DNA of 64,000 nt, taken from Macrostomum hystrix (Eukaryota > Animalia > Platyhelminthes). The notes beneath the pieces are model-generated. The model was not told where the DNA came from. It ran no database searches and saw nothing but the letters and a program-made list of their open reading frames with translations. The stretch is taken from the NCBI GenBank assembly GCA_950097015.1, contig CATNEN010000029.1, positions 620,001 through 684,000 of the forward strand, given 5' to 3'. This document shows, in pieces, positions 1 through 39,979 of this stretch; the stretch's first letter is position 1, and each line of letters opens with the position of its first letter. Made by a program: the position numbers and the translations under genes.

Positions 1-1
1 C

Positions 2-784
2 GGAACTCCTAAGACGCTAACATCTGACAATGGTACACAGTTCACATCGCAATTATTTCAACAGGCCGCCAAACTACTGAATATTCAACAAATATTCACT
101 TCGACATATAATCCAAAAGCAAACCTCGTCGAAAGATTTCACAGAAATCTACATGAAATGCTGACACACTTTGTTTACAAACAACCTGAAGATTGGATTA
201 TTTACATACAATCCGTGACAATGGCCTACAATAGCGCAGTTCATCGTTCAACAGAGAACACACCATTCTTTCTGATGTTCTCTCGAGACTTTCAACCACC
301 GAATCTATTAGTTCAGAAATTACTGCCATCTCAATATGTTGACACGCCGACGACGCTACAAAAGTTCACTTCTCAATTACACCTAGCATGGCAAATTGCA
401 AAACATAATCTCGACAACCAATCTACCGTACCTACAACAAGTAATCATGCTTCTACCTTACAAGTAGGAGATATCGTCTACCTACACTACCCGGCACAGC
501 ATACGCACAAGCATGCTTTCAAATACAAAGGACCTTTCCGTGTAACAGGACTGATATCCGCGACAACAGCACGCCTTGCAAATATCCAGGATCCACATCA
601 ACCTCAGTTCTACGTTCACATTCAACGTTTAAAACGCATCACTAACGACACTACATTCCTTCCAACGTTACAGAATCCAGACCACACAAAAACAACAAAC
701 AAGCACATTGCAACAGCACATGCCGAGACACAAACCACAAACACACCACCAAATACTCATACGTATAACCTACGCCCGCGTTAA
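2..784 (+). CDS. Gypsy/Ty3 pol, 3' part: integrase core plus GPY/F C-terminal domain (5' end outside window)
   Basis: The frame is open from base 2: GTPKTLTSDNGTQFTS...YNPKANLVERFHRNL gives catalytic D and E motifs. YKGPFRV is the GPY/F motif, followed by HIQRLK and a terminal YNLRPR typical of Gypsy integrases. Confidence 0.93.
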   Translation, partial: GTPKTLTSDNGTQFTSQLFQQAAKLLNIQQIFTSTYNPKANLVERFHRNLHEMLTHFVYKQPEDWIIYIQSVTMAYNSAVHRSTENTPFFLMFSRDFQPPNLLVQKLLPSQYVDTPTTLQKFTSQLHLAWQIAKHNLDNQSTVPTTSNHASTLQVGDIVYLHYPAQHTHKHAFKYKGPFRVTGLISATTARLANIQDPHQPQFYVHIQRLKRITNDTTFLPTLQNPDHTKTTNKHIATAHAETQTTNTPPNTHTYNLRPR

Positions 785-915
785 ATTACTCGTTTATTGT
801 TACCCGTGTAGTGACCGGGATTAAGAATAGCACTACAGCTTCTCAAGCTTGTCGTAAAAGGCGACTAAAACCTCTGTTCTCTGCAAACGCCCACACAATT
901 TTCGCGAACACTACC

Positions 916-1134
916 ATGGACTGTCCTGTCTGTCTTGAAGAATTCTCATGTAAACTACCATGTATATGTGTCAATAAACACCATGTTTGCGGTTCTTGCT
1001 TAAGCCTCGCACACTACAAAAAACCATTAAAAAACTGTCCTTTGTGCCGTGGAAATCTCCGCCAATGTATGATATGTAACTCATGGCGAACTGTACAATA
1101 CTGTCAATACGTGATGTTATCTTATTATTGTTAA
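916..1134 (+). CDS. Small RING-HC (C3HC4) finger protein, 72 aa; extra ORF inside the Gypsy element
   Basis: ATG at 916 in ACCATGG context. MDCPVCLEEFSCKLPCICVNKHHVCGSCLSLAHYKKPLKNCPLCR fits C-x2-C-x11-C-x3-H-x2-C-x2-C-x12-C-x2-C, followed by another CxxC. Confidence 0.8.
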   Translation: MDCPVCLEEFSCKLPCICVNKHHVCGSCLSLAHYKKPLKNCPLCRGNLRQCMICNSWRTVQYCQYVMLSYYC

Positions 1135-1164
1135 GCTAAGTCATTTTCTTTTCCTCTCAATAAT

Positions 1165-1198
1165 AAATTCGGGACGAATTTTTCGTAAAAAAGGGAGA
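1165..1198 (+). promoter_or_regulatory. Pre-LTR hairpin and polypurine tract
   Basis: AAATTCG-GGA-CGAATTT stem-loop (1165-1181), then AAAAAAGGGAGA (1187-1198) just before the TG that starts the LTR. Confidence 0.75.
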
Positions 1199-1201
1199 TA
1201 T

Positions 1202-2248
1202 TGTAGAGAGTTGTAAAATACGTTTTTACTTAACGCGCTACTTAAAGTAATGTCACAAGGAAACCTTAGCTATAATGTTTAATCTATTTTTAGGAATGAG
1301 TCATGCGCTATTTTTAGAAACAAGTCATGTGACATGAAATCGGAGAACTGGTTCTCGACAGCTGTATTTACTTGAAGCAAACATGACTCATCGGTTTCTG
1401 CACCTGTATTTACACAATATTCCAAATATGGTAATGTTCACCTGAAAACCCCCCAAAACGCAGCTGATCAAACAAGTCTGACCTCACTGTGCAAACATGT
1501 ATGCCCAATGTAAACACCCGGTAGTAGAACCGGTTTTTCCCCAAAATTTTACTATAAATACAAGCGAAAATCCGAGCTAAAAATTCAGACTCGGAGCGGT
1601 CCACCGGACTTCAAAACACCTTACGAAGAAGAGGACTCATCTCTGAGGGAAAGACAAGTGGTAAGCGCTTTATTAGACAGAGTTATTTATTGCTAGCAAT
1701 AGTTGTTGAATTGAACTAAGTTTACGAGAGCCACATATCGTCGATACATTTGAGAAAGGCCTCCTTGTTTCCTAGGATACATTCCTAGAGGATTATTGAT
1801 TGATTTGAATTGAGTTATCCGTTATCTTTCGGAGGTAACGAAGAAGACGCCCTTCAGGAGGACCTACTAGAGATATACAAGAGAGATTTCAATTGTTCAC
1901 TAGGGCGCACGTTTCTATTGTGAATTCCGAGCTCGAGGAAACCGAAAAGTAATCTGATTCGCTCTCGTCATTTATTGGCCAACAGACAAACTCAAGCAGC
2001 TACCAGGAAGACAAAGAAGACAAGACTACAAAGACTCAAGAAGCAACAGAACCAATACTTCACGGTCGACCAGCACAAGAAGAAGAACCGCCGGCTATCG
2101 AAAACCAAAGACTACAAACAACTCACTATCAAGGAAGAAGAAGAAACTGCAGTAAGTGTCACGTGACTGTTATAAATTCCTAGGCAATTGTTCCCCATTG
2201 TCTAGAAGTGGGAGTTTCGTGTGTCTGATCAACACGCAAAACTCTTCA
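1202..2248 (+). mobile_element. 3' LTR (about 1047 bp) of the Gypsy element
   Basis: Starts TGTAGAGAGTT after the PPT. Ends AACTCTTCA, an imperfect terminal inverted repeat with TG...CA, where a host minisatellite begins. The right end is inferred because the 5' LTR is outside the window. Confidence 0.65.
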
Positions 2249-2460
2249 TCTCCTCCATTCAGCTGCAACCATCACCTCATTTTCTCTCCTCCATTCAGCC
2301 GTACCCAGCACCTCATTTTTTCTCCGGTTGAACCCACCACCTCATTTTCTCTCCTCCATTCAGCTGCACCCACCACCTCATTTTCTCTCCTCCATTCAGA
2401 TGCACCCATCACCTCATTTTCTCTCCTCCATTCAGCCGTACCCAGCACCTCATTTTCACT
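2249..2460. repeat. 36-bp minisatellite, about 6 copies
   Basis: Unit CTCCTCCATTCAGCTGCACCCACCACCTCATTTTCT. Confidence 0.85.
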
Positions 2461-2721
2461 CCCACCATGAACAGTGAAGCGGTAAAACTAAGTTACTCAG
2501 GTTGCGCTTTAAGGATGAAAATAACCAGGAAAAGGAGATTATGTTAAGGACCCGGTTCTTTTTATCGATTTACCTGGACAGCGGTTGGCAGGGGTTCCGA
2601 AATTTTCACCTGAAAACTATAGCGATGAGTGCACAAAAAGAACGAATAAAACTGCGTAAAGCCCAGATTTTTAGGTGCTTAAGTCCTCTCTCTCCCCTCT
2701 TCGCCGCGCCCGCGTACTTAC

Positions 2722-3228: not shown

Positions 3229-6200
3229 CTGCGCGGGGACGAGTCGAGTCCGCTGTATCAAGCTATCTGTGAGCCATAGAGAAGTACTATCTACCCTACA
3301 TAGTATCGACACTATTAGCTACACAGCTATATGACCATATATTTTTATGGCACTGCACATGGAATGCTTTGGCAAAACTGCCTGACGATAAGAGAGTGAG
3401 GATAAATGTGTATCGCGAGCACTCACCTCCAAGCGCTCCCAGGAAGCAGATGGCCGTCTCCGGCTGACGCACGCCTTCGCTGAAGTTGCCGCCGGCGAGG
3501 CGAAGGCCGACGTGAGCGAAGCTGCCGTCGGGTTCCAGCAGGTCCCGCTGCAGGATGTACAGATCCTCCAAGGCGCGGATGTTGTCCACACTGAGGCTGA
3601 CACCCTGGCCCTCGCGCCGGCCAACAATCACGTGATCCAAGCCATCGTTCATCGGCCTATCGAGCACAGTCCGATGATCGCCAGTGATGGAGTCGCGCAG
3701 GTGAACGGCGCCGCCTTTGAGGAAGAGCTGCCAGAACTGGCCGCGCCTATTGAATACAGGTGGCCAGGACTGTGCGGGCCTGGTAGGTCTGGAATCGCAG
3801 ACGGAAGGACTCGGAGACCACCGCCTGGCTGAGCTGGCACGTGCAGGTAAGCGCAGGTCGGACTGTTCACAGCTGGCTTCACCAGGAAACCCCACGGAGC
3901 TGCGGGTTTCAGCAATGGTCAATGCATAGTTGAACAAAGACTTTCATACTGTGCACAGCTGGTTTAGTCCATGGACTGGGATCTAATTGGGAATTAAGTG
4001 CCACGCTTGCGGACACTTGTCCCGCCCGTGGGCTAAGATTCAAACTGCCGACCTCTCAGCTACAACTAGTAAGCTACAGGCGCCCCGTCTTGTAGAACAA
4101 AGAGTTGCGTTAGTGAAAGCCCAATAGAACAAAGACTCACTTTTGTTGCACCGCGGCCCGTATCGGGGCAGGGTGCAGACGCAGGTCAGTCCGAAGCTGC
4201 TCTCCTGGCAGGCACCCCACGGGCCGCAATAGCTCGGCGAGTCGGCGCATTTCGGTGGCCGTCGCAGCGTCGCCGGGACAGTCAGCAGCTTGACATGGTC
4301 CTGGCTGGGCTGCTTTCCAGACTCCGGGAACCGGTCGGTGCTGTACACCTCGCCGTTCCAACGGAAGTCTGAAATTTTTTTTTCTAGATTAGACACTAGA
4401 GGAACTGCCCTTGACCTTGAAGTAGTGAGAAAAGGGTGCGAAATACAACTCTGAATACGACAGCTAGAGACAAGGAAAGTGTATAGAAATCATTATCTGC
4501 AGCATTGCATGACAACATTGATAAAGCAGCTTTTATTAATAATCTTACCGCTGATGCCTTGATAAAAGAAATGAAAGTTTTGTATTAAAATGGGTAATAA
4601 TAATAATGAATTGATTACACTTTCATGTACACCCAATTGGGCCAGATGTGCAGCCGACAGCACAGCCGCAGCTATTGCGCGGCCCATCTGAAAGCTGCGT
4701 ACAGCTGTTCAGTCCATGGACTGGTGAGGAAGCCACAACCACCCTCAATTACACAGCTGTTCCAGTGGAGTGGAGTCGGGAATCGAACCCACGACATTCA
4801 AGTCGTGACCCCGACGCTCTAATCACTAGGCTGCAAGCCCTTTACATACAATAATCTCTGCATGCAATAGGTTAACATTCGTGAAAAGCAGCGGGCGTGC
4901 TCACTTCCGATGACGCCTGAGAACAGATTCTGGCCTCTGGCGTCGGCGCCAAAGATGATCTGATGATATGGGAAGTTGTTCATATCTGGAACAGAAGGTA
5001 AAACAGTTTCAAGTATTATTGGGAGTGTCACCTGAGTTTGAGTGAGCAGATAGATAAACAAATTAGGTCTGCGGACTCACAGGCGCTGAGCACCGGCGCC
5101 TGCTGGTCGTCAACAAACACCCGAAACTGACCGCCCGACCTCTCGATGTACACCGTGTGGTAGGCGCCATTGGCGAAACCGCCGTGCGGCGCGGCCCTAA
5201 TCACGTGACGCACGCGCTGCCGGTTGAGCTTGAGCTGGCCGTCCTCGGCCTCCAACGACCAGAACTGGCCGTTGGTGCCGTTGAAGGTCAGGATAGTGCC
5301 AGTGCCGCGGAAAGTCTGGAAGCCGATGGTGACGTTGTCGGCGTCGGTGACGCGCGGCGGGACAACTCTCAGGATGTAGAAGCCTTCTGGCAGTGGCTGG
5401 TAGCCTCCAGGCAGATTCTCAGCCTCCGCGCTGATGAGGATGCCGGCACCCTGGCGAGTGCACAGACCGTCGGAGCCGATGTTGCTGAGGTAGCCGCTGC
5501 GAGAGCAATCGCACGAGCGTCGGCCATTGATGACACGGCAGATGCCGCCGTTACGACAGTCGAAGCGGCCACAGAGCTCCGGCCGGATTTCGCAGGTGCT
5601 GCCAGTGTAGCCGTTCTCGCACTGACAGAGGCAGCCGGCCTCGCTGGCACAGGCACACCGGCCCAGGCCATTGCAGTTGTTGAGGTAGGCGAAGCAGTCA
5701 AAGTTGGCGCAGTTCGGCCCTGAGTAGTGCCGCCGGCAGTCGCAGAGGGTCACGCATACGTTGCCGACGAGGGCGTTGGGATCACAGCGGCAAGTACCAC
5801 CATTCAGGCACCTGGTCGGGTCACACTGGAGCCTCCGCTCGCATCTGTCACCGACGAAGCCATTCGGGCAGCTGCAGCGGGGGCTGCAGGACGGGCCTTT
5901 GGCCGGGTCGCATTTGCACAGCCCGCCATTTTCGCAGCGAAAGTCGCTGGGGCAGCTGACCTCGTATTGGCAGCGATCGCCCCACCAGCCATCCTGACAG
6001 TAGCAGCTGGGGCTACAAGGGTAGCGGCCCTGGCACCCACAGACTCCGCGGCTGCCGCAATAGTTGGTCGGACAGGTTGGCCGGAGGTCGCAGCGGTCGC
6101 CGCCAAAGCCAGCCGGACAGTTGCACACGACGCCGTCGCCAGCACCGGAGGAGACGTCGTCGCGACAGATGCCGCCGTTGTAGCAGTAGCCGGGCCGGTC

Positions 6201-9200
6201 GGCGCAGCTGACGAGGCGGCAGGCGTTGTCCCAGAGAACGCTGCCGTGCGGCTGGCTGGTGAGCAGCCGTCTCTCGTCCAGCGGCCGGAAGTCGCCGCTA
6301 TGCTGCTTGTAGAAGACCAGGGTGGCCATACAGGTCGGGAGGCGGTGGGTCGCATGCGACAGGAAGCCCATGTCGGCCAGACGGCCTGCCAGGCGGTCGG
6401 GCACACCAGCCAGGTAGGCGTCACACTGGTAAGAGAAGCTGCTGGGGATCGTCGGCGGCCCCTCGAGGTGCATGCCGTCGATGACGAAGTACATCCGCTG
6501 ACTGGAGCGATACGATGAGATGTGCAGCCAGACGCGGTGCCAGCGGCCCTGGCTGAGGCTGTGCGGATAATTGACGTCATCGGAGAAAGCCTGGCCGGCC
6601 TGCAGGCTGAAGCTGTAGCGCAGCCGGCCACCGAACAGTTCCAGGCCGAAAAACCTGGACGGATGGAGGGCGAAAGATCTGATTGGTTACGGCTATGGCC
6701 TTGAACAGTCTTCATGTATCTGGGAGTCTGTGACATTCACTGCGGAGATATTTTTGGAGTGAGCGCGCCACAATAGATTCTGAGGGCGCCACAATGGATT
6801 CTGAGGGCGCCACCTCACCTGCCGCTCTCCATCACGTCAACCAGGAGCACCAGCAAGCCGTTGCTGGCTCTGGTTCTGAAGGACAGCTCCATGCTGAAGC
6901 CGTCCTGGTTGCGCAGCAGCACGTTCTGCCCGGCGGGCTTGCTGTACAGGTGGCTGCCCAGGAAGGTCACCACGAATTTGCTGGCCTGCTGCTCTGGCGG
7001 ACTGGGACGTGTCGGCGGCGCCGAGGTCGGAGTGACGTGCGGCGGCTTTACCTCATCGTCCAGGCTGTAGTGCTTGGACGGCATGAACAGGTCGTACAGG
7101 TACTTGGAGGTCAGCCAGTAGAAATTCTGCATGGAGCCAACGAAGCCGTAGAAGTTTTTTAACTTTCCCGGCATGGTGACCACGTTGCAGCCGCCGATCT
7201 CAATGGTATCGGTGGTCCAAACGAAGCCCTCGCGCGAGTCGGCGTTCAGCAGGGCTGCAAAAATTCGATTGGTTGAGAAAAATGAAAAAGAACCCAGGAA
7301 TTCACTAGTGCTCACTCAGGAGTGGCTTCCACTCGCCAACCTGATCGCATAATCTCAAGCTCAAGGATAAGTCTCTTACAGAGAAGGAGATCCGCGTGAC
7401 CCGGACGATCCAAGCGGACTAACAAATCTTTATTACCCATTAGATCCCAGCTGACACTCAAATCCCCTTGACCCGGATGATCCCAGAGGGCACTCAAATC
7501 CCCTTGAGCCGTTTAATCCCAGCTGACACTCAAATCCCCTTGAGCCTTTTAATCCCAGCTGACACTTAAATCCCCCTGAGCCGTTTAATCCCAGCTGACA
7601 CTTAAATCCCCCTGAGCCGTTTAATCCCAGCTGACACTTAAACCCCCCTGAGCCGTTTAATCCCAGCTGACACTCAAATCACCTTGAGCCGTTTAATCCC
7701 AGAGGGCACTCAAATCCCATTGAGCCGTTTAATCCCAGAGGGCACTCAAATCCCATTGAGCTGTTTAATCCCAGCTGACACTCAAATCACCTGGAGCCGT
7801 TTAATCCCAGAGGGCACTCAAATCCCCTTGACCCGTTTAATCCCAGCTGACACTCAAATCCCCCTGAGTCGTTTAATCCCAGCTGACACTCAAATCACCT
7901 TGAGCCGTTTAATCCCAGAGGGCACTCAAATCCCATTGAGCTGTTTAATCCCAGAGGGCACACGAATCCCCTTGACCCTGATGATCCCGGGGACTCACTT
8001 TTCCCCAGTTCCGATCCGGGCTTGTCGTCATCAACGTAGAACTCCAAGGTGTTGGCCCGCCGTTTAACAATGAGCGTGTGCCATTGGTCATCGTTGTAGC
8101 GCCTAGGATTACTGCTGGCCATTCTCAACACCTGCCGGATTAACAAATCGTGTGATTGACACTTTGAATATCGTTTGGCAGCCTTTTTTCAACGCGCAGT
8201 AAATAAAATCGCACAGCAAATCCAATATTAGCGAATAAACTATTTTTATACTGCATGTAAGCAAGTGGCTACTCATAATGGCTACTCATAGTAGTAATCA
8301 GATGATCAGTAGAATATTAATTGCCTGCCGAAGTTACAGAAGCGATGGCTGGGGAACAGAGGCGTCTATGGAAGTCAAAAGGTCAAAAGTTTGTTAGACA
8401 TTTTAAACAATGTTATAGTTTTCATCGCACGAGACAAAGACAGAAAAATATAAGTCCTTAAGCACTAATCGGTGCATTTCTTTGTTTTTACCTCGCAGTC
8501 AGAGAAACGGTTACCACCTGATGAGATGCACTGAAATTCATGCATTCATATCTGCGTTGAAATTTGTGCTTTCCTCTTTATCCTCTTAAAGGATTTTTTT
8601 AACCCATTGAAGCGAAAATTTTCCGATCTTCTTCTGATCTTCGTGTCTAACAGATCGAAGTATAAACTAAAACGATTATATCTTAGAGAAAAACTCCAAG
8701 ATTATAGCAAGAAAAAAACGAATACATTTTTGTGGCTGGCATTTAAAATTCACAACTAACCAAAGAGCTAATTTGGTTTTTTTAATGGTGCCTGCTGTTG
8801 ATCTAACAGATTATCCATAAGAATACTCGTATATTCAGAGCCTCTCTGTTTTGTTGTCTATGGTAAAACCTGCATACGAGCTGACCAAGTACATTACACT
8901 AGACCAAAAACTTCACTATCTATGGCTTTTCATTTTGTTTAGAATGACTGGAACCAATTTAAAAGCTGCGTGAACGGAAGCAATTCAGAGATCGTATGAT
9001 CAAAGTGAAAATGCGCAGGCACAGTTTTTACCATAGACAACAAGAATAGAAGCTATGAAGGCATGCCCTATCCATTATTAGATTATCAGCAGATCCCTAC
9101 CGGCGGTGTACTAGATGCAATTGGGTGCTTAGTGCCTGAATAATGTAGGTTAGTGGCAATGACAGGCCGACCATCCTGCAGATAGGCTTCCATAAAGATG

Positions 9201-12200: not shown

Positions 12201-15200
12201 GCTCGTAGATCACCTGGACGCTGCCGGTGATGCTGAAAGGCACGCTGACTAGGCTTCGCGGCTTGCCAAGCTCTGCCAGCAGGTCGATCGGTCGGCCGTC
12301 AACTTGAACGACAGCGCCGGTGACGTCGCCAGTGAAAGCCGAAGTGACGGTGTGGTCGGGATGCTTGGCCAGGTTGACAGTGCCACTGTCTGGCACCAGC
12401 CAGAAGTTGTCCCGGTTGACGTTGTGGCCCTCAACCTGGTCGCCGTCGATGGTGACCTCGAGGCGGCCCTCGTTCTTTCTCACCAGCACGGAGTGCTGCT
12501 GGCCGTCATGCAGGATGTTGCGGGGCCGCACTGTGATCATGCCGCTCATCACGTGCTTGGCGTCAATGCCGATGTCCTGGATGTACTTGTACTCGATATG
12601 CAGCAGTCCGTCCTGTCAAGAAGGGATCGCAAATGGATTCATATTTCAGATCAATGTGTTAAATTGATCTACGAGTGGTGTCCAAAAAGTCGTGGGAATT
12701 TTAAATGTAGCTCATAGTCGGATTCAGACACACTGAATTCCTATACGTTTTATGAAAGCTCGTAATTAAGCTTGTTCTTTAACAGCTGAAAGTCGACGGG
12801 GTATTTCAAAAAGCCACATTTTTTCTGTATCTCCCAAAACATTCAACCAATCGCCATGAAAATGCATAATATGGACTAAACTTTTCCTCGATATCCGATT
12901 AAACAACTTCCAGAATCACAGAACAGCAGCATCGTCGAGATATTCAACGATTGTCGTCATCATGTAATCATGTCGGCTAATATTGTTACAATTTTGTATC
13001 GATTAAATTGTTATTAGTTGGTCGTGAAGGGCGGAATATTTATATCCATATGGTGGACTTTCACGAAAATCGGTAATCGTGAAGTAGGCAGTGGGATTTG
13101 AAATATTTCCAAGGGGAAAAATCTCGTGGTCTTTGTACCGCTAATTTTTCCACTCACTCTCAGGTAGATGGTGACATTGGCGTCACCGCGTCTGTTCGAA
13201 TACCACAGCAGGGCGTCTAGCTGCCTGGTCCTGAAGCGCAGATCCAGCTGCTGCTGAATGTTGTTGGGCACGCCGCTGAAGGAGTAGGCCACCTGGCCAT
13301 CTCTGCGGAAGGGAAAAAGGTCTCAGGCCCATGCAGTGTATGAAGCTTTTGGAAACGTGGGGGACGCCCAGCTAAGTCCAGCGGAAGTACGCGGCTAAAA
13401 ACTCACCGACCGATCCTCACTTCATCGATCCGTCTCAAAGGGGAGCCGCCAGGCCATGCCTCCTGGCTCTGGTAGGCTCCTGGCGACTTGGCCGGAGCTT
13501 CTTCGCCGAATCCTTCGCCTTTGACAACGAGCGCGTCTAGCAGTTGTCGGTTGAGAACACACGAGTACTTGGCATTCCACCAGACCATAGCGTTTCGAAT
13601 TGAGCGGTCGGCACTTAGCACGGTCGGTGACTCAGCAGTCGCCCGTTCGGCCAGTGTCCGAGCCAAATAAGCCGCAGTTGCCAGGGCGTTGTCAACGTAA
13701 ACAAATAGTCCAGCTTCGCGCTGCCAGCTGATTGTCAGGTTAAAAATTCGGCGCCTCGATGGTGACAGGCCCGAAGGTGGAATTGAGGTGCGCCACACCT
13801 GTTCCTCCTGGCCCACCGAGATCAGCAGGCCGCCGGATCGGACAGACATTGATAGGCTCGGCTGACCGCCGACAGACAGCACTGGACGCTCAGCGACAAG
13901 AATCGCCAGCGGCAGTTGCAGGTTCAGCGAGAAGCCTTCGCGACTGAGTCGGAAAGACGCAGCCTCTGCTTCGTCGCCAACACTGCGACGCAACGGCGGT
14001 ACTAGCAGACGAGCCGCTGTCAGTTCGCCTCGGCCCGCCTCCCATAGCTGCAGCTCGTCCATGTCGAATGCCGGCCACCTGCCACCGTCCTCGGCGTCAC
14101 CGTTACCGCCGACGTTGAGCACACCGGCAGCACCGACGCCTAATCCGGCGTGAATTGCCTCGGCTGACGCAGCCGAAGCTGCCAGCGAGCCGTTGACGAA
14201 TAGGCGCAGGCCGAGGCCGCCGCGCTGCCAAGTGAATTCCACGAGCTGCCAGGAGTTCAGTGCCAGAGCCGGCCCGTCGGTTCGGGCTAGCCAGGCCTCT
14301 TTAGCGTCGGCGTCCACTAGGCGAACAGCGAGGCGGCCGTCGGCGCCAGCCGACAAGTGGAAGGTTGGTGCCGAGAGAAGCGGCGCGCCGGATCCGGGCA
14401 GCGCGAGTGGGCGGAGCCAGGCGCGCAGGGTGAAGCCGCGGCCACACTTGGCCAGGTTGGCGAGGCAGGGTCGCTGCCCTGCCGTTGGCATCGGCAAACG
14501 GATCAGTGAGTCCGCCCGGCCGGGCAGTCGGAGGGCGCGCCCGAAGCCGGCTGGCAAGAGTCGGGCGCTGCCGGCCAGCTGGAAGCCGCCGCCAGGCAGG
14601 TCCGGGTGCGGCACCCAGGCGCCGTCGGCCGATTCGAAGGGCAGCACCAGGGCGCGGACTGTGGGGCGGGGCGCAAATGGGCAACGATCAGACTGGGAAA
14701 CTGTAAGGATGGGGTCATAGGGGAAGAATGGCAGGTGAGTGAGACAGGTTGGGGCGAAAAGGACAGGTTTGGGACAGACAGATAGGGGCCAAAGGGACAG
14801 GTTCGGACAGACAGGTAGGGAAAAAATGGACAGGTTTGTACAGACAGGTAGATGGAAATACGAATTTTGTGTTTCTTAGAAACTAGACGTTTAAAAACGG
14901 GCCTAAACGAGCAAACAAATTGTTGCGGCGATTTGACTTTTATAGCTTTAATAATGTTTAAGCTGGCGAGTTGATTTAAAACTTTCTGCCTTTACATAAT
15001 CTAGTTTCTAGGCATTGATTTTGAACTTCAATTGCTCATTTCGCAATATTAATTTTCTACTTTCCCTTCATCCGTGCCACTCCGCAGCTCCACTTTTATA
15101 TTTTCTTGCGTTCCCATTATTAGTTTTCCCCATTCCCATTCGGTCTGCGATGCAGGGAGATCGGAAACTGCCGAGAGGCTGCAAGAAGATAACTGCCTGC

Positions 15201-29288: not shown

Positions 29289-31865
29289 TTTTCTTCCCAT
29301 GCTTCGAAAGGCATGTTTCGAGTTTTCCCGTTGCCATTTACCCGAGACCGTCGCAAAGACTAATTAATTATTCAAGCGCGGTAATGCCCCAAGCGATTGC
29401 AAATGTGCTGCGGCAGACGAACTTTTCTCGTATCGCTTGAGACGCATTAACTGCTATTCATATGTCGCAGACAAATCGAATAGGCACGCGATTGCATTCT
29501 GCAACTATGCCAGCAGCCTCCACGAATGATTCGGTGACAATGAGGGAGCTCCTCATTTTCGGAGCTGCAAGTTTTGCAAGCCAGTCTGTCAGTCAGCCCA
29601 GGCCGAGAAGCAGACAACTGATCAACTGCTCAGCCCAGACGGTAATTGGGCTGAGTCGGCTGCAGCAAATCCCTTCGGCAAATTGCCTGCCCCGCCCCTC
29701 GAACCGCCGCCAGCTTTGGTCGCAGTCCCGCGGGGAGTCGGGAAAGGCAGAGAGGAAGATATAGGGGCTGGAAAAGTGGATGCTGCATAGAGAGCAAACG
29801 GCCACTTCGCAACCGGCCATGTGAAGTACTCTATCATCCAGTTCTTGCTCGTCCTGCCTCGCATATTCTCTATATGTTACTCTGCTTCATGTATTTTTTT
29901 CTACCGATAGTTTTTTTCTAGAAATTTGGTCTGAACGATTTTCAGCTCAAACCCATAGAAACATGGCATGCTTGATGTTAGTGCCGATAAATTTTTCGCT
30001 TTTAATAACTGTTTTCAAATTATTATTCTTATTTCAAATTAGAATAACTGATTGTAATAGGTTTCGATCAATTTCCCGACTTTGATGTAAACTTTCCGAC
30101 GGAGACATCAAACTCTGTTGGGAAAAGGATTAGAAATACCGGCGGATAAATCCCCAATTCTCAGAGTTTGCTCTCGAGCCGCCTTTAGTCCCTTATACTC
30201 CCAGATTCCTCCAGATGCTAATTCCCAAAAGGGGAGTCAAGCGGTTCCCTAGCTTACAGAGCAAAAATGCCACAGACTACCAACCCACCCCAAATTCCAT
30301 CCCCAACTTCACTGCTGGCAGCTCGGGACGGGATCTGGGGCTCGCCAGAGAGCCGAGGGTTTCCAGATAGCGGCGATCGAACTCATAATGAATCGCCAAT
30401 GCTGTTTGCGCAAGGGTGACTTTCGCCTCCCTTATTCGCCTCGCACTGTGCAAAATGCTTGGCAAGGCGGTGGGGATGAATTTGATTGGTCGAGATTCTT
30501 CATTACAGCGTCGGTTAGGCTCTAGGTGCTTGGGAGGGCCAAAGTGGCCTCCGCACCCTTAGCTAGGGAACCGGTTTGAACCGGCCCGCTCCTCGCTGCC
30601 CCCCTCCTCCTCTCCCCTTCTCTCTAACTTTTTTCTTCATAGCTCGCTCATCCCCCTGTGTAGGCGCAAGAATTAGACCCAGTGATTCTGTAGATAACAC
30701 TTGAGCATGCTCACAGCTGGTCACCTCTCGTCCCTCGTCCCAATCCATAGCTCGACAGCTCGAGGCGTAGAGAGTTCGATTCATATTGGAAACAACCTGT
30801 GTCAGTAAACAAAATTCTTAACTCCCCATTGCTTCGGTCCATGGACTGATCGAACAGCCTGTACACAGTCTTTGGAAGATGTCACTGGCATACCCAACAA
30901 TATGGACTTTTGGCGCAGTGAAAGTATGTAAAATGGCACAGAATTGAAGAATTTTGTTCAGAGCCAAGAAGCGCCGAGTCAAAGAAGCTGCTCAGTTTGT
31001 GAGCAAAGGAAGAAAAGAGAACTTTATGTGAGCCCGAATCCGAGAAGGCTCAGGTAAATCAATCGATGCAACCCTGGCGAGAGCATTGCGCTAGGAAGGC
31101 ATGACTTGACAAATTCCTGGGCAATGGGGACAGAGAAAGCGCGTCTTCAGTCATGATGGCTAAAGGAAGAATGTCCTTGGAGATTGGCAGTTTAAGATAC
31201 AGGTGAAAAGCGAGGCGTACAGATTGAGGTGAATCACCTTGGCCTCGTTAATGCACTCATCAAAAGTGACAATTAAATACTAGAAAATTATGTTTGTTTT
31301 TATAGACAGTGTTTCCAACAACAGCACGATGTACGTTAAAGACCCCGAGAAGCTCAACTACTCATAAATATAACTCATATATGCATAGGTAAGCCCTTTA
31401 TATACGTTGCGTACAGTTTGATAGTTCCGTGATTCATCCAGAAACTTTCGCGGCAAGAAATCAGAGCAATTGTGAAGCTGGACAGCAGTATCTTTTTCTT
31501 CGTTTCTGAGGCCTTTAATTTTCGAGTCGGAGCAGATGCTCGCGTGCTGGGATTCCTAGGTTTGGGTGGGTGGAAAAGCCAGCTTTCCCGCCTCTGCAAG
31601 CCAAGTTCAACTGCGTGAGAAAGCAAAAACTAAGACATGACGCTTTCGTGCAATAAATTATCCAAAGACTGACAGTGAATTCGGGGCGAGAGATCAATAA
31701 GGCTCTCTCTGCTCTTGCACCGGAGCTGTGTTTGACAAGCTTTTCAAGCTTACGGATCTCTCGAAATACAAGACGAGCTGCTGACGATACTCGTGAAATG
31801 AATTTTCTTGACAACAGGAGTAACCGAAAAATGAACTTTACTCGAATCGATGAATGGCAGCTTCG

Positions 31866-34800
31866 GGAATCCAAGTAGATTTTCTTCTGGAATCCAGGTG
31901 AAAAGTCTCGAGGAATCCTGGTAGAAATTCTCGAGGAATCCTGGTGAAAAATCTCGAGGAATCCTGGTAGAAATTCTCGAGGAATCCTGGTGAAAAATCT
32001 CGAGGAATCCTGGTAGAAATTCTCGAGGAATCCTGGTGAAAAATCTCGAGGAATCCTGGTAGAAATTCTCGAGGAATCCAGGTAGAAATTCTCGAGGAAT
32101 CCAGGTGGAAATTCTCGAGGAATCCAGGTGGAAATTCTCGAGGAATCCTGGTAGACATTCTCGAGGAATCCTGGTGGAAATTCTCGAGGAATCCAGTTGG
32201 AAATTCTCGAGGAATCCTGGTGGAAATTCTCGAGGAATCCTGGTAGAAATTCTCGAGGAATCCTGGTAGACATTCTCGAGGAATCCAAATAGAAATTCTC
32301 GAGGAATCCTCGTAGAAATTCTCGAGGAATCCTGGTAGAAATTCTCGAGGAATCCAGGTAAAAATTCTCGAGGAATCCTGGTAGACATTCTTGAGGAATC
32401 CTGGTGGAAATTCTCGAGGAATCCAAGTGGAAATTCTCGAGGAAACCAGGTGGAAATTCTCGAGGAATCCTGGTGGAAATTCTCGAGGAGTCCTGGTGGA
32501 AATTCTCGAGGAATCCTGGTGGAAATTCTCGAGGAATCCTGGTGGAAATTCTCGAGGAATCCTGGTAGACATTCTCGAGGAATCCTGGTGGAAATTCTCG
32601 AGGAATCCAGTTGGAAATTCTCGAGGAATCCTGGTGGAAATTCTCGAGGAATCCTGGTAGACATTCTCGAGGAATCCAAATAGAAATTCTCGAGGAATCC
32701 CGGTGGAAATTCTCGAGGAATCCAGGTGGAAATTCTCGAGGAATCCTGGTAGACATTCTCGAGGAATCCTGGTGGAAATTCTCGAGGAATCCAGTTGGAA
32801 ATTCTCGAGGAATCCTGGTCGAAATTCTCGAGGAATCCTGGTAGACATTCTCGAGGAATCCTGGTGGAAATTCTCGAGGAATCCAGTTGGAAATTCTCGA
32901 GGAATCCTGGTCGAAATTCTCGAGGAATCCTGGTAGAAATTCTCGAGGAATCCTGGTAGACATTCTCGAGGAATCCAAATAGAAATTCTCGAGGAATCCT
33001 CGTAGAAATTCTCGAGGAATCCTGGTAGAAATTCTCGAGGAATCCAGGTAAAAATTCTCGAGGAATCCTGGTAGACATTCTTGAGGAATCCTGGTGGAAA
33101 TTCTCGAGGAATCCAAGTGGAAATTCTCGAGGAAACCAGGTGGAAATTCTCGAGGAATCCTGGTGGAAATTCTCGAGGAATCCAGTTGGAAATTCTCGAG
33201 GAATCCTGGTGGAAATTCTCGAGGAATCCTGGTAGACATTCTCGAGGAATCCAAATAGAAATTCTCGAGGAATCCCGGTGGAAATTCTCGAGGAATCCAG
33301 GTGGAAATTCTCGAGGAATCCTGGTAGACATTCTCGAGGAATCCTGGTGGAAATTCTCGAGGAATCCAGTTGGAAATTCTCGAGGAATCCTGGTCGAAAT
33401 TCTCGAGGAATCCTGGTAGACATTCTCGAGGAATCCTGGTGGAAATTCTCGAGGAATCCAGTTGGAAATTCTCGAGGAATCCTGGTCGAAATTCTCGAGG
33501 AATCCTGGTAGAAATTCTCGAGGAATCCTGGTAGACATTCTCGAGGAATCCAAATAGAAATTCTCGAGGAATCCTCGTAGAAATTCTCGAGGAATCCTGG
33601 TAGAAATTCTCGAGGAATCCAGGTAAAAATTCTCGAGGAATCCTGGTAGACATTCTTGAGGAATCCTGGTGGAAATTCTCGAGGAATCCAAGTGGAAATT
33701 CTCGAGGAAACCAGGTGGAAATTCTCGAGGAATCCTGGTGGAAATTCTCGAGGAGTCCTGGTGGAAATTCTCGAGGAATCCTGGTGGAAATTCTCGAGGA
33801 ATCCTGGTGGAAATTCTCGAGGAATCCTGGTAGAAATTCTCGAGGAATCCTGGTAGAAATTCTCGAGGAATCCCAGTGGAAATTCTCGAGGAATCCAGGT
33901 GGAAATTCTCGAGGAATCCTGGTAGACATTCTCGAGGAATCCTGGTGGAAATTCTCGAGGAATCCAGTTGGAAATTCTCGAGGAATCCTGGTGGAAATTC
34001 TCGAGGAATCCTGGTGGAAATTCTCGAGGAATCCTGGTAGACATTCTCGAGGAATCCAAATAGAAATTCTCGAGGAATCCTCGTAGAAATTCTCGAGGAA
34101 TCCTGGTAGAAATTCTCGAGGAATCCTGGTGGAAATTCTCGAGGAATCCTGGAGGAAATTCTCGAGGAATCCTGGTAGAAATTCTCGAGGAATCCTGGTA
34201 GAAATTCTCGAGGAATCCTGGTAGAAATTCTCGAGGAATCCTGGTAGAAATTCTCGAGGAATCCAGGTGAAAATTCTCGAGGAATCCAGGTAAAAATTCT
34301 CGAGGAATCCTGGTGGAAATTCTCGAGGAATCCAGGTAGAAATTCTCGAGGAATCCAGGTGGAAATTCTCGAGGAATCCTGGTGGAAATTCTCGAGGAAT
34401 CCTGGTGGAAATTCTCGAGGAATCCTGGTAGACATTCTCGAGGAATCCAAATAGAAATTCTCGAGGAATCCTCGTAGAAATTCTCGAGGAATCCTGGTGG
34501 AAATTCTCGAGGAATCCTGGTGGAAATTCTCGAGGAATCCTGGTAGAAATTCTCGAGGAATCCTGGTAGAAATTCTCGAGGAATCCCGGTGGAAATTCTC
34601 GAGGAATCCAGGTGGAAATTCTCGAGGAATCCAAGTGGAAATTCTCGAGGAATCCTGGTAGGAATTCTCGAGGAGTCCTGGTGGAAATTCTCGAGGAATC
34701 CTGGTGGAAATTCTCGAGGAATCCTGGTAGAAATTCTCGAGGAATCCTGGTAGAAATTCTCGAGGAATCCTGGTAGAAATTCTCGAGGAGTCCTGGTGGA

Positions 34801-34900
34801 AATTCTCGAGGAATCCAAACGGAAATTCTCGTGGAATCCAGGTGGAAATTCTCGAGGAATCTAAGTGGAAATTATCAAGGAATCCAGGTAACAAATCTAC
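31866..34900. repeat. 23-bp satellite, about 130 monomers, with higher-order structure
   Basis: Unit GGTAGAAATTCTCGAGGAATCCT, with degenerate edges. Confidence 0.95.
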
Positions 34901-37285: not shown

Positions 37286-39979
37286 CTCCAATGTGGCCCT
37301 GGGTAGTGCTGGCCTGCGCAGCAATCAATGTCATATTTTTAGGTGGAAAACGACGTGCGTTCGGTGTTTTCGTTGCGCAACTGCGCACTGAGTTTAACGG
37401 CACAACGTCGCTTGCCGAGCTCAACTGGATCGGTAAGGACCGGTTATAAAATCCCTAAAATAAAATGCTCTTTGCTTCGGACTGGAGCGTTTGCCTCTTG
37501 CACCAAGGTCCCTGAGCTCGATTCCGCGGCGAGGCCAGCGGAAAAGAAGGCTTGAGGGCTTGTGGTACAATTTACGCCCTTTAGAAAATTGAGAACCAAG
37601 GCGTAGTGAGAGTGTACACTGCCTGTCAGGGGCAGATGCACACACCTGTGTGAGTGTGTTTTAGCGGAAGGGGAAGAACTGCCTCCTCGCTGCCGGTGGG
37701 TCTACACTCACACAGCCATCCTGCAATTTTTCACTGAGTTCCTGTTTTTCAATTTCAGTCAGTGTCTAGTCTGTTTCGCGTCGCATTTTCCTAAGTATCC
37801 TACTTTTTAATTAGGCTTACTGTCTGCAATCTATTTTACCCCACTCAGTATGCATTGTATTATGAGATCGGTTGCGCAGGTGCAAAAAATGAGCCTTCCT
37901 ATCATTACCGAAGAGGATGCAGGATAGCCACCCACTCGATGGAATTATTTATTATGAGATAGTAGCAGCAAGTATAAATGATCATTTATTATTATTAAGT
38001 ATTAATATGCTGCTAATTATCTATTAGCAGCAAGTGTTCCAGTTTCTGTATAGGCCGATGGAAAAACTGGTTTGGACCGGATTCCAAGCACACACACAAA
38101 CACACGCACGCAAAACTATGGATCAATCGAACCTCTCTCTTAGCCGATAATTAAACGGAAGGAGGTTGCCACCGGGCAGGGGGTGAGGATGGGAGTGGCG
38201 GCAGGCGCCCATGATTTGAATAATTAATTCTGGCCTCCGGGAACAGCGCTTCCAGGCCGCTAGGAAGCAGGCTGAGTAAGGGAGAGAGAAAGGTTTCAGG
38301 TTCTCAGAAACTGGGCAACAGTTCTGAACGAGCTTTCTTCTGGGCGCTTTGGAGTTTCTCCCCACCCCCCGATGAGCGCTCTTTTTAAGTTCGTTTGTTC
38401 ACCCACTTGGTGAGTTTCATGAGGCGTGCAGCCTATATGGATTGCATCGAAATGAATGCATGAACGTCGTTACGTCGTTATCGCCATTAATTTAAATTAT
38501 TAAAAATGTACCAACCAGCGAACCGTGGATTTTACAGTCTTGTTCGTGCATTGAAAATCTTTTTTCTGCGGATTTCCCTAAGAACTGTATTCTTTCTTTT
38601 TGATTTTATCTATCACTGTAGGATGGTCTCTGAGACACAAGCAACCAATCACTGTAGGATGGCTTCTGAGACACAAGCAACCAATCACTGTAGGATGGCC
38701 TCTGAGACACAAGCAACCAATCACTGTAGGATGGCTTCTGAGACACAAGCAACCAATCACTGTAGGATGGCCTCTGAAACACAAGCAATCGTTTAATGTG
38801 GGTTCTCAATCGCTCATTATTCTCCATCTTTACCTTACAGGTGACAGCTACGCTGCTTTGGGCTACATGACTACAGCCGCCACCAGCACAGCAATCCTCG
38901 TGTCCGGCCGGAAATTCCGTCTCTTCCAGCTGCTCGGATCCTTGTTCATCCTGCTGGCCTGTGTGACCTCCGCCTACGTGCCAAACCCGCACTGGCTGTT
39001 CCTGACGCACACCCTGTTCCACGGCATCGGCAGCTCCTGCGTGCTCAGCGTGGTCGGTCTGATCGTCAACGAGTACTTTGACAAGCAGCACCGGCACCAT
39101 ATTCTAGCCACCACATTGGTCTCCGGTGGCTCCATTGCGTCCATCGTGTTCGTGGAAATGTACGCCTACCTAATTGAGACCTACACTTGGCGCAAAGCCT
39201 TCCTAATCCTTGGGGGCATATACCTGGTCGTGAACCTCAGTGGTGTATTTTTCTTCGGAAAGAATCCAGCTAAGCAGGACTACCTGAGCAGCAACAATAG
39301 CTGCCTGGGCGCTATCCGAGAGATCGAGCGCCGCAAACTGCCCTACCTTGGTCTGTGGTTCTTCGACCGCATCATGACAAGCATTGTCACCTACGGCATG
39401 CTGCTCAACTTGGCCGACTACGTAAGACGCCGTGAGAGCAGCCTCACCAAATCAACCCATCTCACAATGCTGTTCGCCTCCGGCGAAGCCAGCACCTACG
39501 CCATCGCCGCCGTGATCACCGCGTTCACCAAGGACCTGCTGCTGAACAGGCTGAAGTACATCCTGCTGGCCTGCACCGCTCTGCTGGCCGTCATGCTCGC
39601 TCTCTGGGAGCTCTGCGCCTCCAACGACGGCCTCAGCAAGCTGCTGGCCTACTTGTGCGGCTTCGGCCTCGGTCCGAGCATCACCTTCCTGTTTCCTGCC
39701 GGAGAGGAGCTCACCACTCTGCCGGGCCACCTAGCCTATCCGTTCAGCCTGGCTGGCATGGGAGTTGGCATGGCGCTGTCGCCCATTGTCACGGCGGTGA
39801 TCGCCGAAGCCTACGAGTACCGCGGCTTCTTCCTCATCCAGGCCTTCCTCATCTTCTTGAAGCTGCTGGCCCTGTGTGCCATTGTGCTGCTGCAGAAGCT
39901 GGTGCTGGGGCCTGGTGATGTTGAGTACGAAGCGGTCACTTTGGAGGAACTCAACCGAGAAGGCGAGGTGAAAAAATGA
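35754..39979 (+). CDS. SLC16/monocarboxylate-transporter-like MFS protein, 3 exons (35754-35947, 37188-37432, 38841-39979), about 525 aa
   Basis: Exon 2 has WPWVVLAC...FGVFVAQLRTEF...NWIG, an MCT TM1-2 signature. Exon 3 is a hydrophobic multi-TM ORF (LFHGIGSS...VNEYFDK, ETYTWRKAF). The phases match (2 and 1). Linkage of the polyQ exon 1 relies on a GTCAGT donor and is less certain. Confidence 0.85.
37490..37630 (+). mobile_element. SINE family A copy (partial)
   Basis: GCGTTTGCCTCTTGCACCAAGGTCCC...GGCTTGTGGTACAATTTACGCCC...AGTGTACACTGCCTG matches the reverse complement of 54070-54252. Confidence 0.65.
38624..38785. repeat. 36-bp minisatellite, about 4.5 copies, just upstream of the MCT exon 3 acceptor
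   Basis: Unit CACTGTAGGATGGCTTCTGAGACACAAGCAACCAAT. Confidence 0.9.

What the first reader, a model, noticed from the sequence alone, without database searches (positions are those of the whole stretch)
785..1201. Gypsy retrotransposon carries its own small RING-finger (putative E3 ligase) gene between integrase and the PPT
Seen: 131 nt after the pol stop, an ATG in ACCATGG context opens a 72-aa ORF with a complete C3HC4 RING. Its CxNxHxxCxxC core resembles SINA/SIAH-type RINGs, and an extra CxxC follows. It lies upstream of the hairpin, PPT and LTR, so it is inside the element, in the slot where env sits in errantiviruses. Established: RING domains recruit E2 enzymes, and some viruses use small RING ligases (herpesvirus ICP0, poxvirus p28) against host defence. 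Inference: this may be a transposon-encoded anti-silencing or counter-defence ubiquitin ligase, an accessory gene I do not recognise from animal Gypsy elements.
Basis: partly seen in the sequence, partly recalled or inferred. Interest (0 to 1): 0.82.

Follow-up and report, generated by a model that had tools for sequence, protein, structure and literature searches.

The report
Retrotransposon-borne double-RING gene, truncated copy
A flatworm-type Gypsy retroelement really does carry a small RING-finger (ubiquitin-ligase-like) gene after its integrase, and related elements keep that gene under selection. The copy in this window is a shortened version that has lost most of the second of two RING fingers.

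Summary
Pol stops at 782-784. 131 nt later an ATG in ACCATGG opens a 72-codon ORF (916-1134) with a complete C3HC4 RING, upstream of a hairpin, PPT and LTR start. That RING pattern occurs once in the window and never in 100 random 64-kb sequences.

The ORF is a real gene of the element lineage. Two related Ty3/Gypsy elements place a homologous ORF about 120 nt after an integrase that is 69-77% identical: one is an unnamed sequencing-run contig, the other is in the Macrostomum lignano assembly. All eight RING ligands are invariant, as are the Pro before and the Arg after the last Cys. Non-synonymous divergence is 0.28-0.29 while synonymous sites are saturated.

The five kin proteins (124-229 aa) all have two tandem RING-HC fingers. 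The window ORF ends inside the second finger, so this copy is truncated.

A specific SINA/SIAH affinity is not supported; the best profile matches are TRIM, UHRF1, RING1B and BRCA1 RINGs. E3-ligase activity is inferred and a counter-defence role is untested.

I found no description of such a gene in the papers searched. I rate it a new variant of a known kind, the extra ORFs of LTR retroelements.

The parts
1..784 (+). 3' end of pol: C-terminal part of the integrase core plus the integrase C-terminal region, cut by the window start; stop codon at 782-784. No stop or frameshift in the 260 codons present.
   Evidence: Pfam rve E 6e-7. 69% aa identity to the integrase of L001. 74-77% to the M. 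lignano copies. pN/pS is 0.18-0.24.
803..868 (+). Conserved non-coding block in the 131-nt leader between the pol stop and the RING ATG. Candidate cis-acting RNA/DNA signal; function unknown.
   Evidence: 97% identity over 66 nt to L005, although the flanking coding DNA gives no blastn match. L001 keeps it with 3 compensatory pair changes. The fold is not unusually stable, z -0.44. No Rfam or tRNA hit.
916..1134 (+). RING accessory gene, 72 codons plus stop. It is a shortened copy of a double-RING gene: one truncation consistent with one deletion, with no frameshift or internal stop detected.
   Evidence: 61% identity to P0001 and 56-58% to the M. lignano ORF. Similarity to kin lies in one frame only.
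922..1047 (+). RING finger 1, from first to eighth metal ligand (C3 to C44). Complete C3HC4.
   Evidence: Pattern check. Ligands invariant in 6 sequences, as are Leu after C2, Pro before C8 and Arg after C8. PDB RING hits.
1165..1181 (+). 7-bp hairpin with a 3-nt loop just upstream of the PPT.
   Evidence: Read from the sequence. Lies in the 1165-1215 block that is 88-91% identical to L005.
1187..1198 (+). Polypurine tract (plus-strand primer site).
   Evidence: Read from the sequence. The same tract precedes the LTR in L005.
1202..2131 (+). 3' LTR starting with TG. The end at about 2131 is uncertain. It holds a TATA-like 16-mer at 1552-1567.
   Evidence: The LTR start is conserved with L005. 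There is a weak terminal inverted repeat between 1204-1214 and 2118-2128. GC rises past about 2000. The 16-mer is shared with both L005 LTRs. The 5' LTR lies outside the window, so the end is not proven.

Best explanation
The window opens inside a Ty3/Gypsy (Metaviridae-type) retroelement of a flatworm-like host.

Shown: between the integrase stop and the PPT, this lineage carries its own small gene with its own ATG. In complete form it encodes two tandem RING-HC zinc fingers of about 95 aa, followed by a lineage-specific tail of up to about 110 aa. The gene has been kept under purifying selection across element lineages whose synonymous sites are saturated.

Inferred: finger 1 is an E2-binding, ubiquitin-transfer-activating RING. 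It keeps a hydrophobic residue between C1 and C2, the Pro before C8 and an invariant 'linchpin' Arg right after C8. Finger 2 lacks a conserved linchpin and probably acts as a structural partner, in the manner of the inactive half of a RING pair. The variable tail would choose the substrate. The protein is most likely made from a subgenomic (spliced or trans-spliced) mRNA, as other post-pol genes of retroelements are, and the strongly conserved 66-nt block upstream may serve that mRNA.

This particular copy keeps finger 1 whole but ends inside finger 2 and has no tail. It is most likely a recently truncated, functionally impaired copy and not the working form. What the ligase acts on (a host factor or the element's own proteins) is unknown.
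For: Gene reality and position:
- The ORF and its context were read directly.
- Chance is excluded.
- Scanning 1.84 billion representative proteins found a small family, P0001, P0002 and P0007.
- P0001 lies 120 nt after an integrase that is 69% identical to the window's.
- Two M. lignano copies have a 124-aa homologue after RT_RNaseH-Integrase_H2C2-rve.
- The relative reading frame of pol and RING differs among the three lineages, and L005 has a stop upstream of its ATG. So this is a separate ORF and not a pol fusion.

Selection:
- pN is 0.28-0.29 against pS 0.75-0.95 for the window versus L001 and L005.
- All 8 ligands plus L, P and R are invariant at pairwise identities down to 27%.

RING nature:
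- The family profile hits TRIM21, TRIM5, UHRF1, RING1B and BRCA1 RINGs at E 1e-5 to 1e-3. Finger 2 hits the Bre1 and MAT1 RINGs.
- The AF2 model of P0001 has pLDDT 60-86 over residues 9-110, and all Foldseek top hits are RING domains.

Truncation:
- The alignments show finger 2 complete in all 5 kin and cut in the window.
- No remnant of the missing part appears in any frame.
- Residues up to the end of similarity are still conserved, which suggests a recent loss.

Precedent for a spliced, non-env post-pol gene: Cer1 CERV (PMC10309623).
Against: - No biochemical or expression evidence exists.
- Pfam gathering thresholds are not reached by the window ORF or by any relative.
- The Foldseek E-values are all at least 0.02, and the window ORF's own model is poor, with mean pLDDT 59.
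- Only three integrase-linked lineages are known, and no sister copy from the window's own genome could be obtained. I therefore cannot show that the short form is a one-off.
- Some small viral RING proteins are not ligases.
- The context of P0002 and P0007 is unresolved: the upstream ORF of L002 is not an integrase, and L003, L004 and L006 are too short.
- The splice-acceptor idea rests on one conserved YAG motif and three sequences.
Confidence: 0.6

Rival explanations
1. Counter-defence ligase. The RING protein ubiquitinates a host restriction or silencing factor so that the element escapes control.
For: This is compatible with everything under the best explanation. The variable, fast-evolving tail is what one might expect of a substrate-recognition part in a conflict. 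Viruses are known to encode RING ligases against host defence (established knowledge).
Against: There is no evidence about any target. Two of the three integrase-linked lineages carry forms with no tail or a very short one.
Confidence: 0.2
2. Non-catalytic zinc-finger scaffold. The double RING serves particle assembly, trafficking or RNA handling, like a small viral matrix-type RING protein, and does not transfer ubiquitin.
For: The protein is small. The M. lignano form starts with a myristoylation-like Met-Gly...Ser motif. The arenavirus Z matrix RING appears among the Foldseek hits (TM-score for the target 0.64-0.68, E 0.11-0.22). The post-pol gene of Cer1 handles RNA export.
Against: The Pro before C8 and the Arg after C8, typical of E2-activating RINGs, are invariant. 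The N-terminal motif is in one lineage only. No transmembrane segment is present, with a maximum 19-residue hydropathy of 1.26. The Z match is no better than many ligase RINGs.
Confidence: 0.15
3. The 72-aa form is itself the working gene of this element family: a minimal single-RING ligase or a modulator that competes for E2.
For: Finger 1 is intact, the ATG has a good context, and the ORF has no internal stop. Tail length varies widely among the kin.
Against: Finger 2 is complete in all five relatives down to 27% identity, and here it is cut after three of its eight ligands. Between the start of finger 2 and the hairpin, the window has roughly 200 nt less than the M. lignano relative. The AF2 model is poor.
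Confidence: 0.12
4. Chance ORF, or a neutrally decaying fragment of a captured host gene.
For: Pfam hits are below threshold. The exact protein is not in the collections.
Against: The RING pattern has an expectation of 0 in 100 random sequences. The gene holds the same position in three diverged lineages and pN is far below pS. No close cellular donor was found among 1.84 billion representatives; the next hits have E of about 1e-4 or worse.
Confidence: 0.03

Closest known systems
Additional ORFs (ORF3 / aORFs) of LTR retrotransposons: the bdelloid rotifer ORF3 types (PMC5408684) and the post-pol ORF of C. elegans Cer1, which is part of CERV (PMC10309623)
   Same: [quoted passage not shown]
   Different: None of the ORF3 types described there is a RING finger. 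They are env-like, GDSL lipase, DEDDy exonuclease, coiled-coil or TM types, and the words RING and ubiquitin do not occur in that paper. CERV is 517 aa, spliced from five exons, without zinc fingers of this kind, and acts in RNA export.
RING-HC (C3HC4) E3 ubiquitin ligases, e.g. the TRIM21, TRIM5, UHRF1, RING1B and BRCA1 RING domains
   Same: Eight-ligand spacing, a hydrophobic residue between C1 and C2, Pro before C8, and a basic residue right after C8. These are the best sequence and fold matches.
   Different: The similarity is weak (E 1e-5 at best with a profile) and covers the RING only. There is no B-box, coiled-coil or other partner domain. Two RINGs lie back to back, about 6 residues apart. 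The gene is carried by a retroelement.
Heterodimeric RING pairs (BRCA1-BARD1, RING1B-BMI1)
   Same: One RING has E2-activating features and is paired with a second RING that lacks them. Here the invariant Arg follows finger 1 only.
   Different: Here the two would be in one chain. Packing of finger 1 against finger 2 is an inference and was not examined in the model.
Platyhelminth GAG-ENV-POL errantivirus-like Ty3/Gypsy elements (PMC13524379)
   Same: The M. lignano relative shows gag (zf-CCHC), then an 815-aa ORF with a weak viral fusion-glycoprotein hit, then PR-RT-RNaseH-IN.
   Different: That survey does not mention a gene after pol or any RING. The env-like hit here is below Pfam's threshold. 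The window itself holds only the integrase end, so its own upstream genes are unknown.
   Same: A small RING protein encoded by a virus or virus-like element.
   Different: ICP0 and p28 did not appear as hits in any search. Z appeared only as one of many generic RING fold matches at non-significant E. No such sequence was fetched.

Membership tests
RING-HC (C3HC4) zinc finger | Eight metal ligands with spacing C-x2-C-x9-39-C-x1-3-H-x2-3-C-x2-C-x4-48-C-x2-C | tested here: met
   Finger 1 of the window ORF has gaps of 2, 11, 3, 2, 2, 12 and 2. The ligands are invariant in 6 sequences.
RING-HC (C3HC4) zinc finger | Profile match above the curated Pfam threshold | tested here: not met
   Window: zf-RING_2 16.5 bits against 27.3. 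Best relative: P0002, zf-C3HC4_3 26.6 against 27. L005 ORF: 18.2 against 27.3.
RING-HC (C3HC4) zinc finger | Significant similarity to solved RING domains | tested here: met
   The family profile gives TRIM21 E 1.3e-5, TRIM5 5.4e-5 and UHRF1 2.8e-4. Finger 2 hits the Bre1 and MAT1 RINGs at E 0.04-0.07.
RING-HC (C3HC4) zinc finger | Cross-brace fold | tested here: inconclusive
   The AF2 model of P0001 has pLDDT 60-86 over the two fingers. All Foldseek top hits are RINGs, but E is at least 0.02. The window ORF's model has mean pLDDT 59.
RING-type E3 ubiquitin ligase | E2-contact residues: a hydrophobic residue between C1 and C2, Pro before C8, and a basic/Asn 'linchpin' after C8 | tested here: met
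   I or V is present in all 6 sequences; Pro and Arg are invariant. The role of these positions rests on established knowledge of RING-E2~Ub complexes.
RING-type E3 ubiquitin ligase | Ubiquitin-transfer activity with an E2 | not testable with these tools
   No biochemical data are available.
SINA/SIAH-type RING ligases | Sina_RING profile above threshold | tested here: not met
   11.4 bits for the window and at most 21.1 bits in kin, against a cut-off of 29.3.
SINA/SIAH-type RING ligases | RING followed by the SIAH-type zinc finger and the substrate-binding domain | tested here: not met
   Neither the window ORF nor any family member hits Sina_ZnF; only the aphid host protein P0008 does. What follows finger 1 is a second RING-HC.
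Ty3/Gypsy (Metaviridae-type) LTR retroelement | pol domain order PR-RT-RNaseH-IN with an H2C2 plus rve integrase | tested here: met
   Shown in the relatives L001 and L005. The window holds only the rve end, which is 69-77% identical to them.
Ty3/Gypsy (Metaviridae-type) LTR retroelement | PPT directly upstream of a 3' LTR that starts with TG | tested here: met
   1187-1198 and 1202. Conserved with L005.
Ty3/Gypsy (Metaviridae-type) LTR retroelement | Matching 5' and 3' LTRs, PBS and target-site duplication | not testable with these tools
   The 5' part of the element lies outside the window. In L005 an LTR is followed by a PBS-like TGG stretch.
Errantivirus env (gene in the post-pol slot) | A large membrane glycoprotein with signal and transmembrane segments | tested here: not met
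   The proteins are 72-229 aa, have no env family hit and show a maximum 19-residue hydropathy of 0.74-1.26.

The most novel reading that the evidence does not exclude
A lineage of flatworm Ty3/Gypsy retroelements, possibly env-carrying, encodes its own double-RING ubiquitin ligase and uses it to remove a host restriction or silencing factor. This would be a retrotransposon-encoded ubiquitin-based counter-defence gene, expressed through a dedicated and highly conserved cis element just after pol.
Probability: 0.15. Interest if true: 0.85.

Novelty: new variant of a known kind. Interest (0 to 1): 0.62.

Why it matters
LTR retroelements are known to pick up extra genes, but the functions of those genes are mostly unknown. 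A RING-finger gene is not among the types described in the papers I could search.

A conserved ubiquitin-ligase-like gene would mean that some retrotransposons bring their own tool for rewriting host or self protein stability. Complex viruses do this; simple retroelements were not thought to.

The family is small and well delimited. It sits in a laboratory flatworm genus with genome and RNA-seq resources, so its expression and distribution can be examined directly.

For this window the practical message is more modest: the copy seen here is a truncated one.

Tried and rejected
Searches that found nothing or little:
- The word-indexed protein search found nothing with the 72-aa ORF. With the family alignment it found only the three clusters already known.
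- Exact look-ups of the window's RING ORF and of five other window ORFs were all absent from the collection. I could therefore not obtain sister copies from the window's own genome or name the host directly.
- No second copy of the element exists in the window.
- The JGI metagenome scan found no relative.
- Rfam and ARAGORN found nothing in the leader.
- A heat-shock-element scan of the LTR was at chance level, with none in 1202-2131.
- A search for the run accessions in papers found nothing.

Ideas rejected:
- Pol-RING fusion by frameshift or read-through. The relative frames differ among the lineages and stops intervene.
- An N-terminal extension of the RING ORF through the conserved block. 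The frame is not conserved, and L005 has a stop upstream of its ATG.
- A premature stop in the M. lignano ORF. The sequence past its stop has no independent similarity to the kin tails.
- An env-like membrane protein.

Steps left out on purpose:
- I fetched no ICP0, p28, arenavirus Z or errantivirus record.
- I did not scan viral contigs, because I could not tell whether it would bring in an animal virus.

Full report
**What is in the window**

The window is metazoan DNA. It holds long ORFs with Laminin_G/EGF, MFS and arrestin domains. It opens inside the integrase of a retroelement.

- The 260 codons of frame 2 up to TAA at 782-784 hit Pfam rve.
- 131 nt later, ATG at 916 in ACCATGG (913-919) opens a 72-codon ORF that ends at 1134.
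- The ORF has 13 Cys and 3 His. Its first 44 residues fit the C3HC4 RING spacing exactly.
- That pattern occurs once in stop-free frames of the window and never in 100 random 64-kb sequences of the same first-order composition.
- A 7-bp hairpin lies at 1165-1181, a purine tract at 1187-1198, and TG at 1202. Together these mark the PPT and the start of the 3' LTR.
- The LTR probably ends near 2131. The evidence is a weak terminal inverted repeat and a rise in GC. The 5' LTR is outside the window, so the end is not proven.
- No other copy of the element is in the window.

**Is it a real gene?**

The word-indexed protein search found nothing. HMMER against 1.84 billion representative proteins found a small family:

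| Protein | Length | E-value | Identity to window ORF |
|---|---|---|---|
| P0001 | 206 aa | 6.5e-17 | 61% over the shared part |
| P0002 | 130 aa | 4.6e-6 | 38% |
| P0007 | 214 aa | 1.9e-4 | 32% |
| P0011 | 229 aa | variant of P0007 | - |

All come from unnamed assemblies of public sequencing runs, on contigs of 0.9-2.1 kb.

- **L001 (carries P0001).** It has Integrase_H2C2 plus rve, 69% identical to the window's integrase and ending on the same residues. A 120-nt gap follows, then the RING gene.
- **L005 (M. lignano).** The window's integrase also finds a Macrostomum lignano protein at 74% identity. The locus fetched around it holds two near-identical copies 9.73 kb apart. Each has RT_RNaseH, Integrase_H2C2 and rve, and about 120 nt later a 124-aa ORF that is 56-58% identical to the window's.
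- **Position.** Three diverged lineages therefore keep the gene in the same place.
- **Separate ORF.** The frame of the RING ORF relative to pol differs in all three, and L005 has a stop just upstream of its ATG. The gene is thus a separate ORF with its own start, neither a pol extension nor the last exon of a fusion.
- **Selection.** Window versus L001 and L005 gives pN 0.28-0.29 with pS 0.75-0.95, which is saturated. The integrase over the same pairs gives pN 0.16-0.19.
- **Invariant residues.** All eight ligands of finger 1 are invariant in six sequences whose pairwise identity falls to 27%. So are the Leu after C2, the Pro before C8 and the Arg after C8.

This is purifying selection on a protein.

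**What the gene is**

In all five relatives finger 1 is followed, about six residues later, by a second complete finger with RING-HC spacing, and then by a tail of about 30 to 110 residues.

- The tail is poorly conserved and is modelled with pLDDT below 50.
- The family profile matches solved RING domains of ubiquitin ligases: TRIM21 at E 1.3e-5, then TRIM5, TRIM25, TRIM32, UHRF1, RING1B, BRCA1 and TRAF6. Finger 2 on its own matches the Bre1 and MAT1 RINGs.
- The AF2 model of P0001 is of moderate confidence over both fingers. It finds only RING domains by Foldseek, at non-significant E.
- Pfam thresholds are never reached, so this is a divergent RING family.
- Sina_RING appears only as a weak secondary hit and no SIAH-type finger follows.
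- No transmembrane segment is present, so this is not an env.

**The copy in the window**

The ORF has finger 1 whole, the linker, and the first three ligands of finger 2. It then runs into unrelated residues and stops.

- No remnant of the rest of finger 2 or of a tail is found in any frame.
- Between the start of finger 2 and the hairpin, the window has roughly 200 nt less than the M. lignano relative.

Counting breaks:
- **RING gene of this copy:** one truncation consistent with one deletion, no frameshift and no internal stop.
- **The part of pol in the window:** none.
- **L005 copy one:** one frame change in its integrase part.
- **L005 copy two:** pol is read in two ORFs, so at least one break.
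- **L005 RING ORFs:** both unbroken and identical.

The residues up to the end of similarity are still conserved, so the loss in the window looks recent. Whether the short form is a one-off could not be tested. Neither the window's ORFs nor its genome are in the searchable collections.

**How it most likely works**

*Shown:* a conserved, separately initiated double-RING gene sits in the post-pol slot.

*Inferred from established knowledge of RING-E2~ubiquitin complexes:*
- Finger 1 has the hydrophobic, Pro and basic 'linchpin' positions of an active RING.
- Finger 2 lacks a conserved linchpin (Gly, Asn or Lys) and may be a structural partner.
- The tail would select a substrate.

*Inferred by analogy:* expression from a subgenomic mRNA. 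Post-pol genes of retroelements are expressed this way, for example Cer1 CERV (PMC10309623).

The substrate is unknown. A counter-defence role is possible but has no evidence. A non-catalytic, matrix-like role is a rival. It is suggested by the small size, by a myristoylation-like start in the M. lignano form only, and by a generic fold match to an arenavirus Z RING.

**Context and comparison**

The M. lignano relative forms a tandem unit with these parts in order:
- an LTR
- gag (zf-CCHC)
- an 815-aa ORF with a sub-threshold hit to a viral fusion-glycoprotein family (E 1.8e-5)
- PR-RT and RNaseH-IN
- the RING gene
- a second LTR, followed by a PBS-like stretch

A 2026 survey reports that platyhelminth errantiviruses have the order GAG-ENV-POL. 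It mentions no gene after pol and no RING (PMC13524379). So the RING gene is probably an addition and not a replacement for env.

The M. lignano LTR-retrotransposon study does not mention it either (PMC12801592). Nor does the rotifer ORF3 survey (PMC5408684), nor three other full-text searches. Within the limits of that library, the gene type is undescribed.

- Only three integrase-linked lineages are known.
- The contexts of P0002 and P0007 are unresolved.
- There are no expression data.
- The look-ups that brought in related element copies, and the unexpectedly large L005, are declared under Tried and rejected.

Noticed in passing
window 803-868 (also L005 13466-13531 and 3736-3801; L001 about 1331-1395): A 66-nt non-coding block 19 nt after the pol stop is 97% identical between the window and the M. 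lignano relative, although the neighbouring coding DNA is too diverged for blastn. L001 keeps it with three compensatory pair changes. It has no Rfam or tRNA match and is not unusually stable. It may be a cis signal, such as a splice acceptor or RNA element, for the RING mRNA.
   Followed up: partly
L005 7312-9759: In the M. lignano relative an 815-aa ORF between gag and pol has a sub-threshold Pfam hit to a viral fusion-glycoprotein family (E 1.8e-5). This fits the GAG-ENV-POL order reported for platyhelminth errantiviruses. I did not pursue it.
   Followed up: partly
L005 4387-5251, 14126-14989 and 5252-5285: Two element copies 9.73 kb apart appear to share one LTR, which is followed by a PBS-like TGG stretch. 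This is a tandem LTR-internal-LTR-internal-LTR arrangement.
   Followed up: partly
window 1552-1567; L005 4607-4622 and 14337-14352: An identical TATA-like 16-mer lies inside the LTRs of the window element and of the M. lignano relative, whereas the rest of the LTRs do not align.
   Followed up: yes
L005 13571-13591: The M. lignano RING protein begins with a Met-Gly...Ser motif that looks like an N-myristoylation signal. The other family members do not have it.
   Followed up: no
L002 585-654: In the AT-rich contig that encodes P0002, a GT...AG intron-like stretch of about 70 nt with a pyrimidine tract ends exactly at the RING ATG. The upstream ORF there is not an integrase, so this relative may sit in a different kind of locus.
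   Followed up: partly
window 31728-34900: A satellite of 23-nt units with more than 130 copies, open in three reading frames on the minus strand.
   Followed up: no
window 2249-2462: A 36-nt tandem repeat of about 6 copies lies just beyond the probable LTR end. It is unclear whether it belongs to the element or to the host.
   Followed up: no
window 58712-59857: A 381-aa ORF with a gag-type zinc knuckle (zf-CCHC). It probably belongs to another retroelement and is unrelated at DNA level to the one at the window start.
   Followed up: no
window 5028-6494 (-), 13403-14647 (-), 38600-39979 (+), 43349-44659 (-): Long host ORFs with EGF/Laminin_G, Laminin_G_3, MFS and arrestin domains. They show the window is animal DNA. 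None is in the protein collection by exact match.
   Followed up: partly
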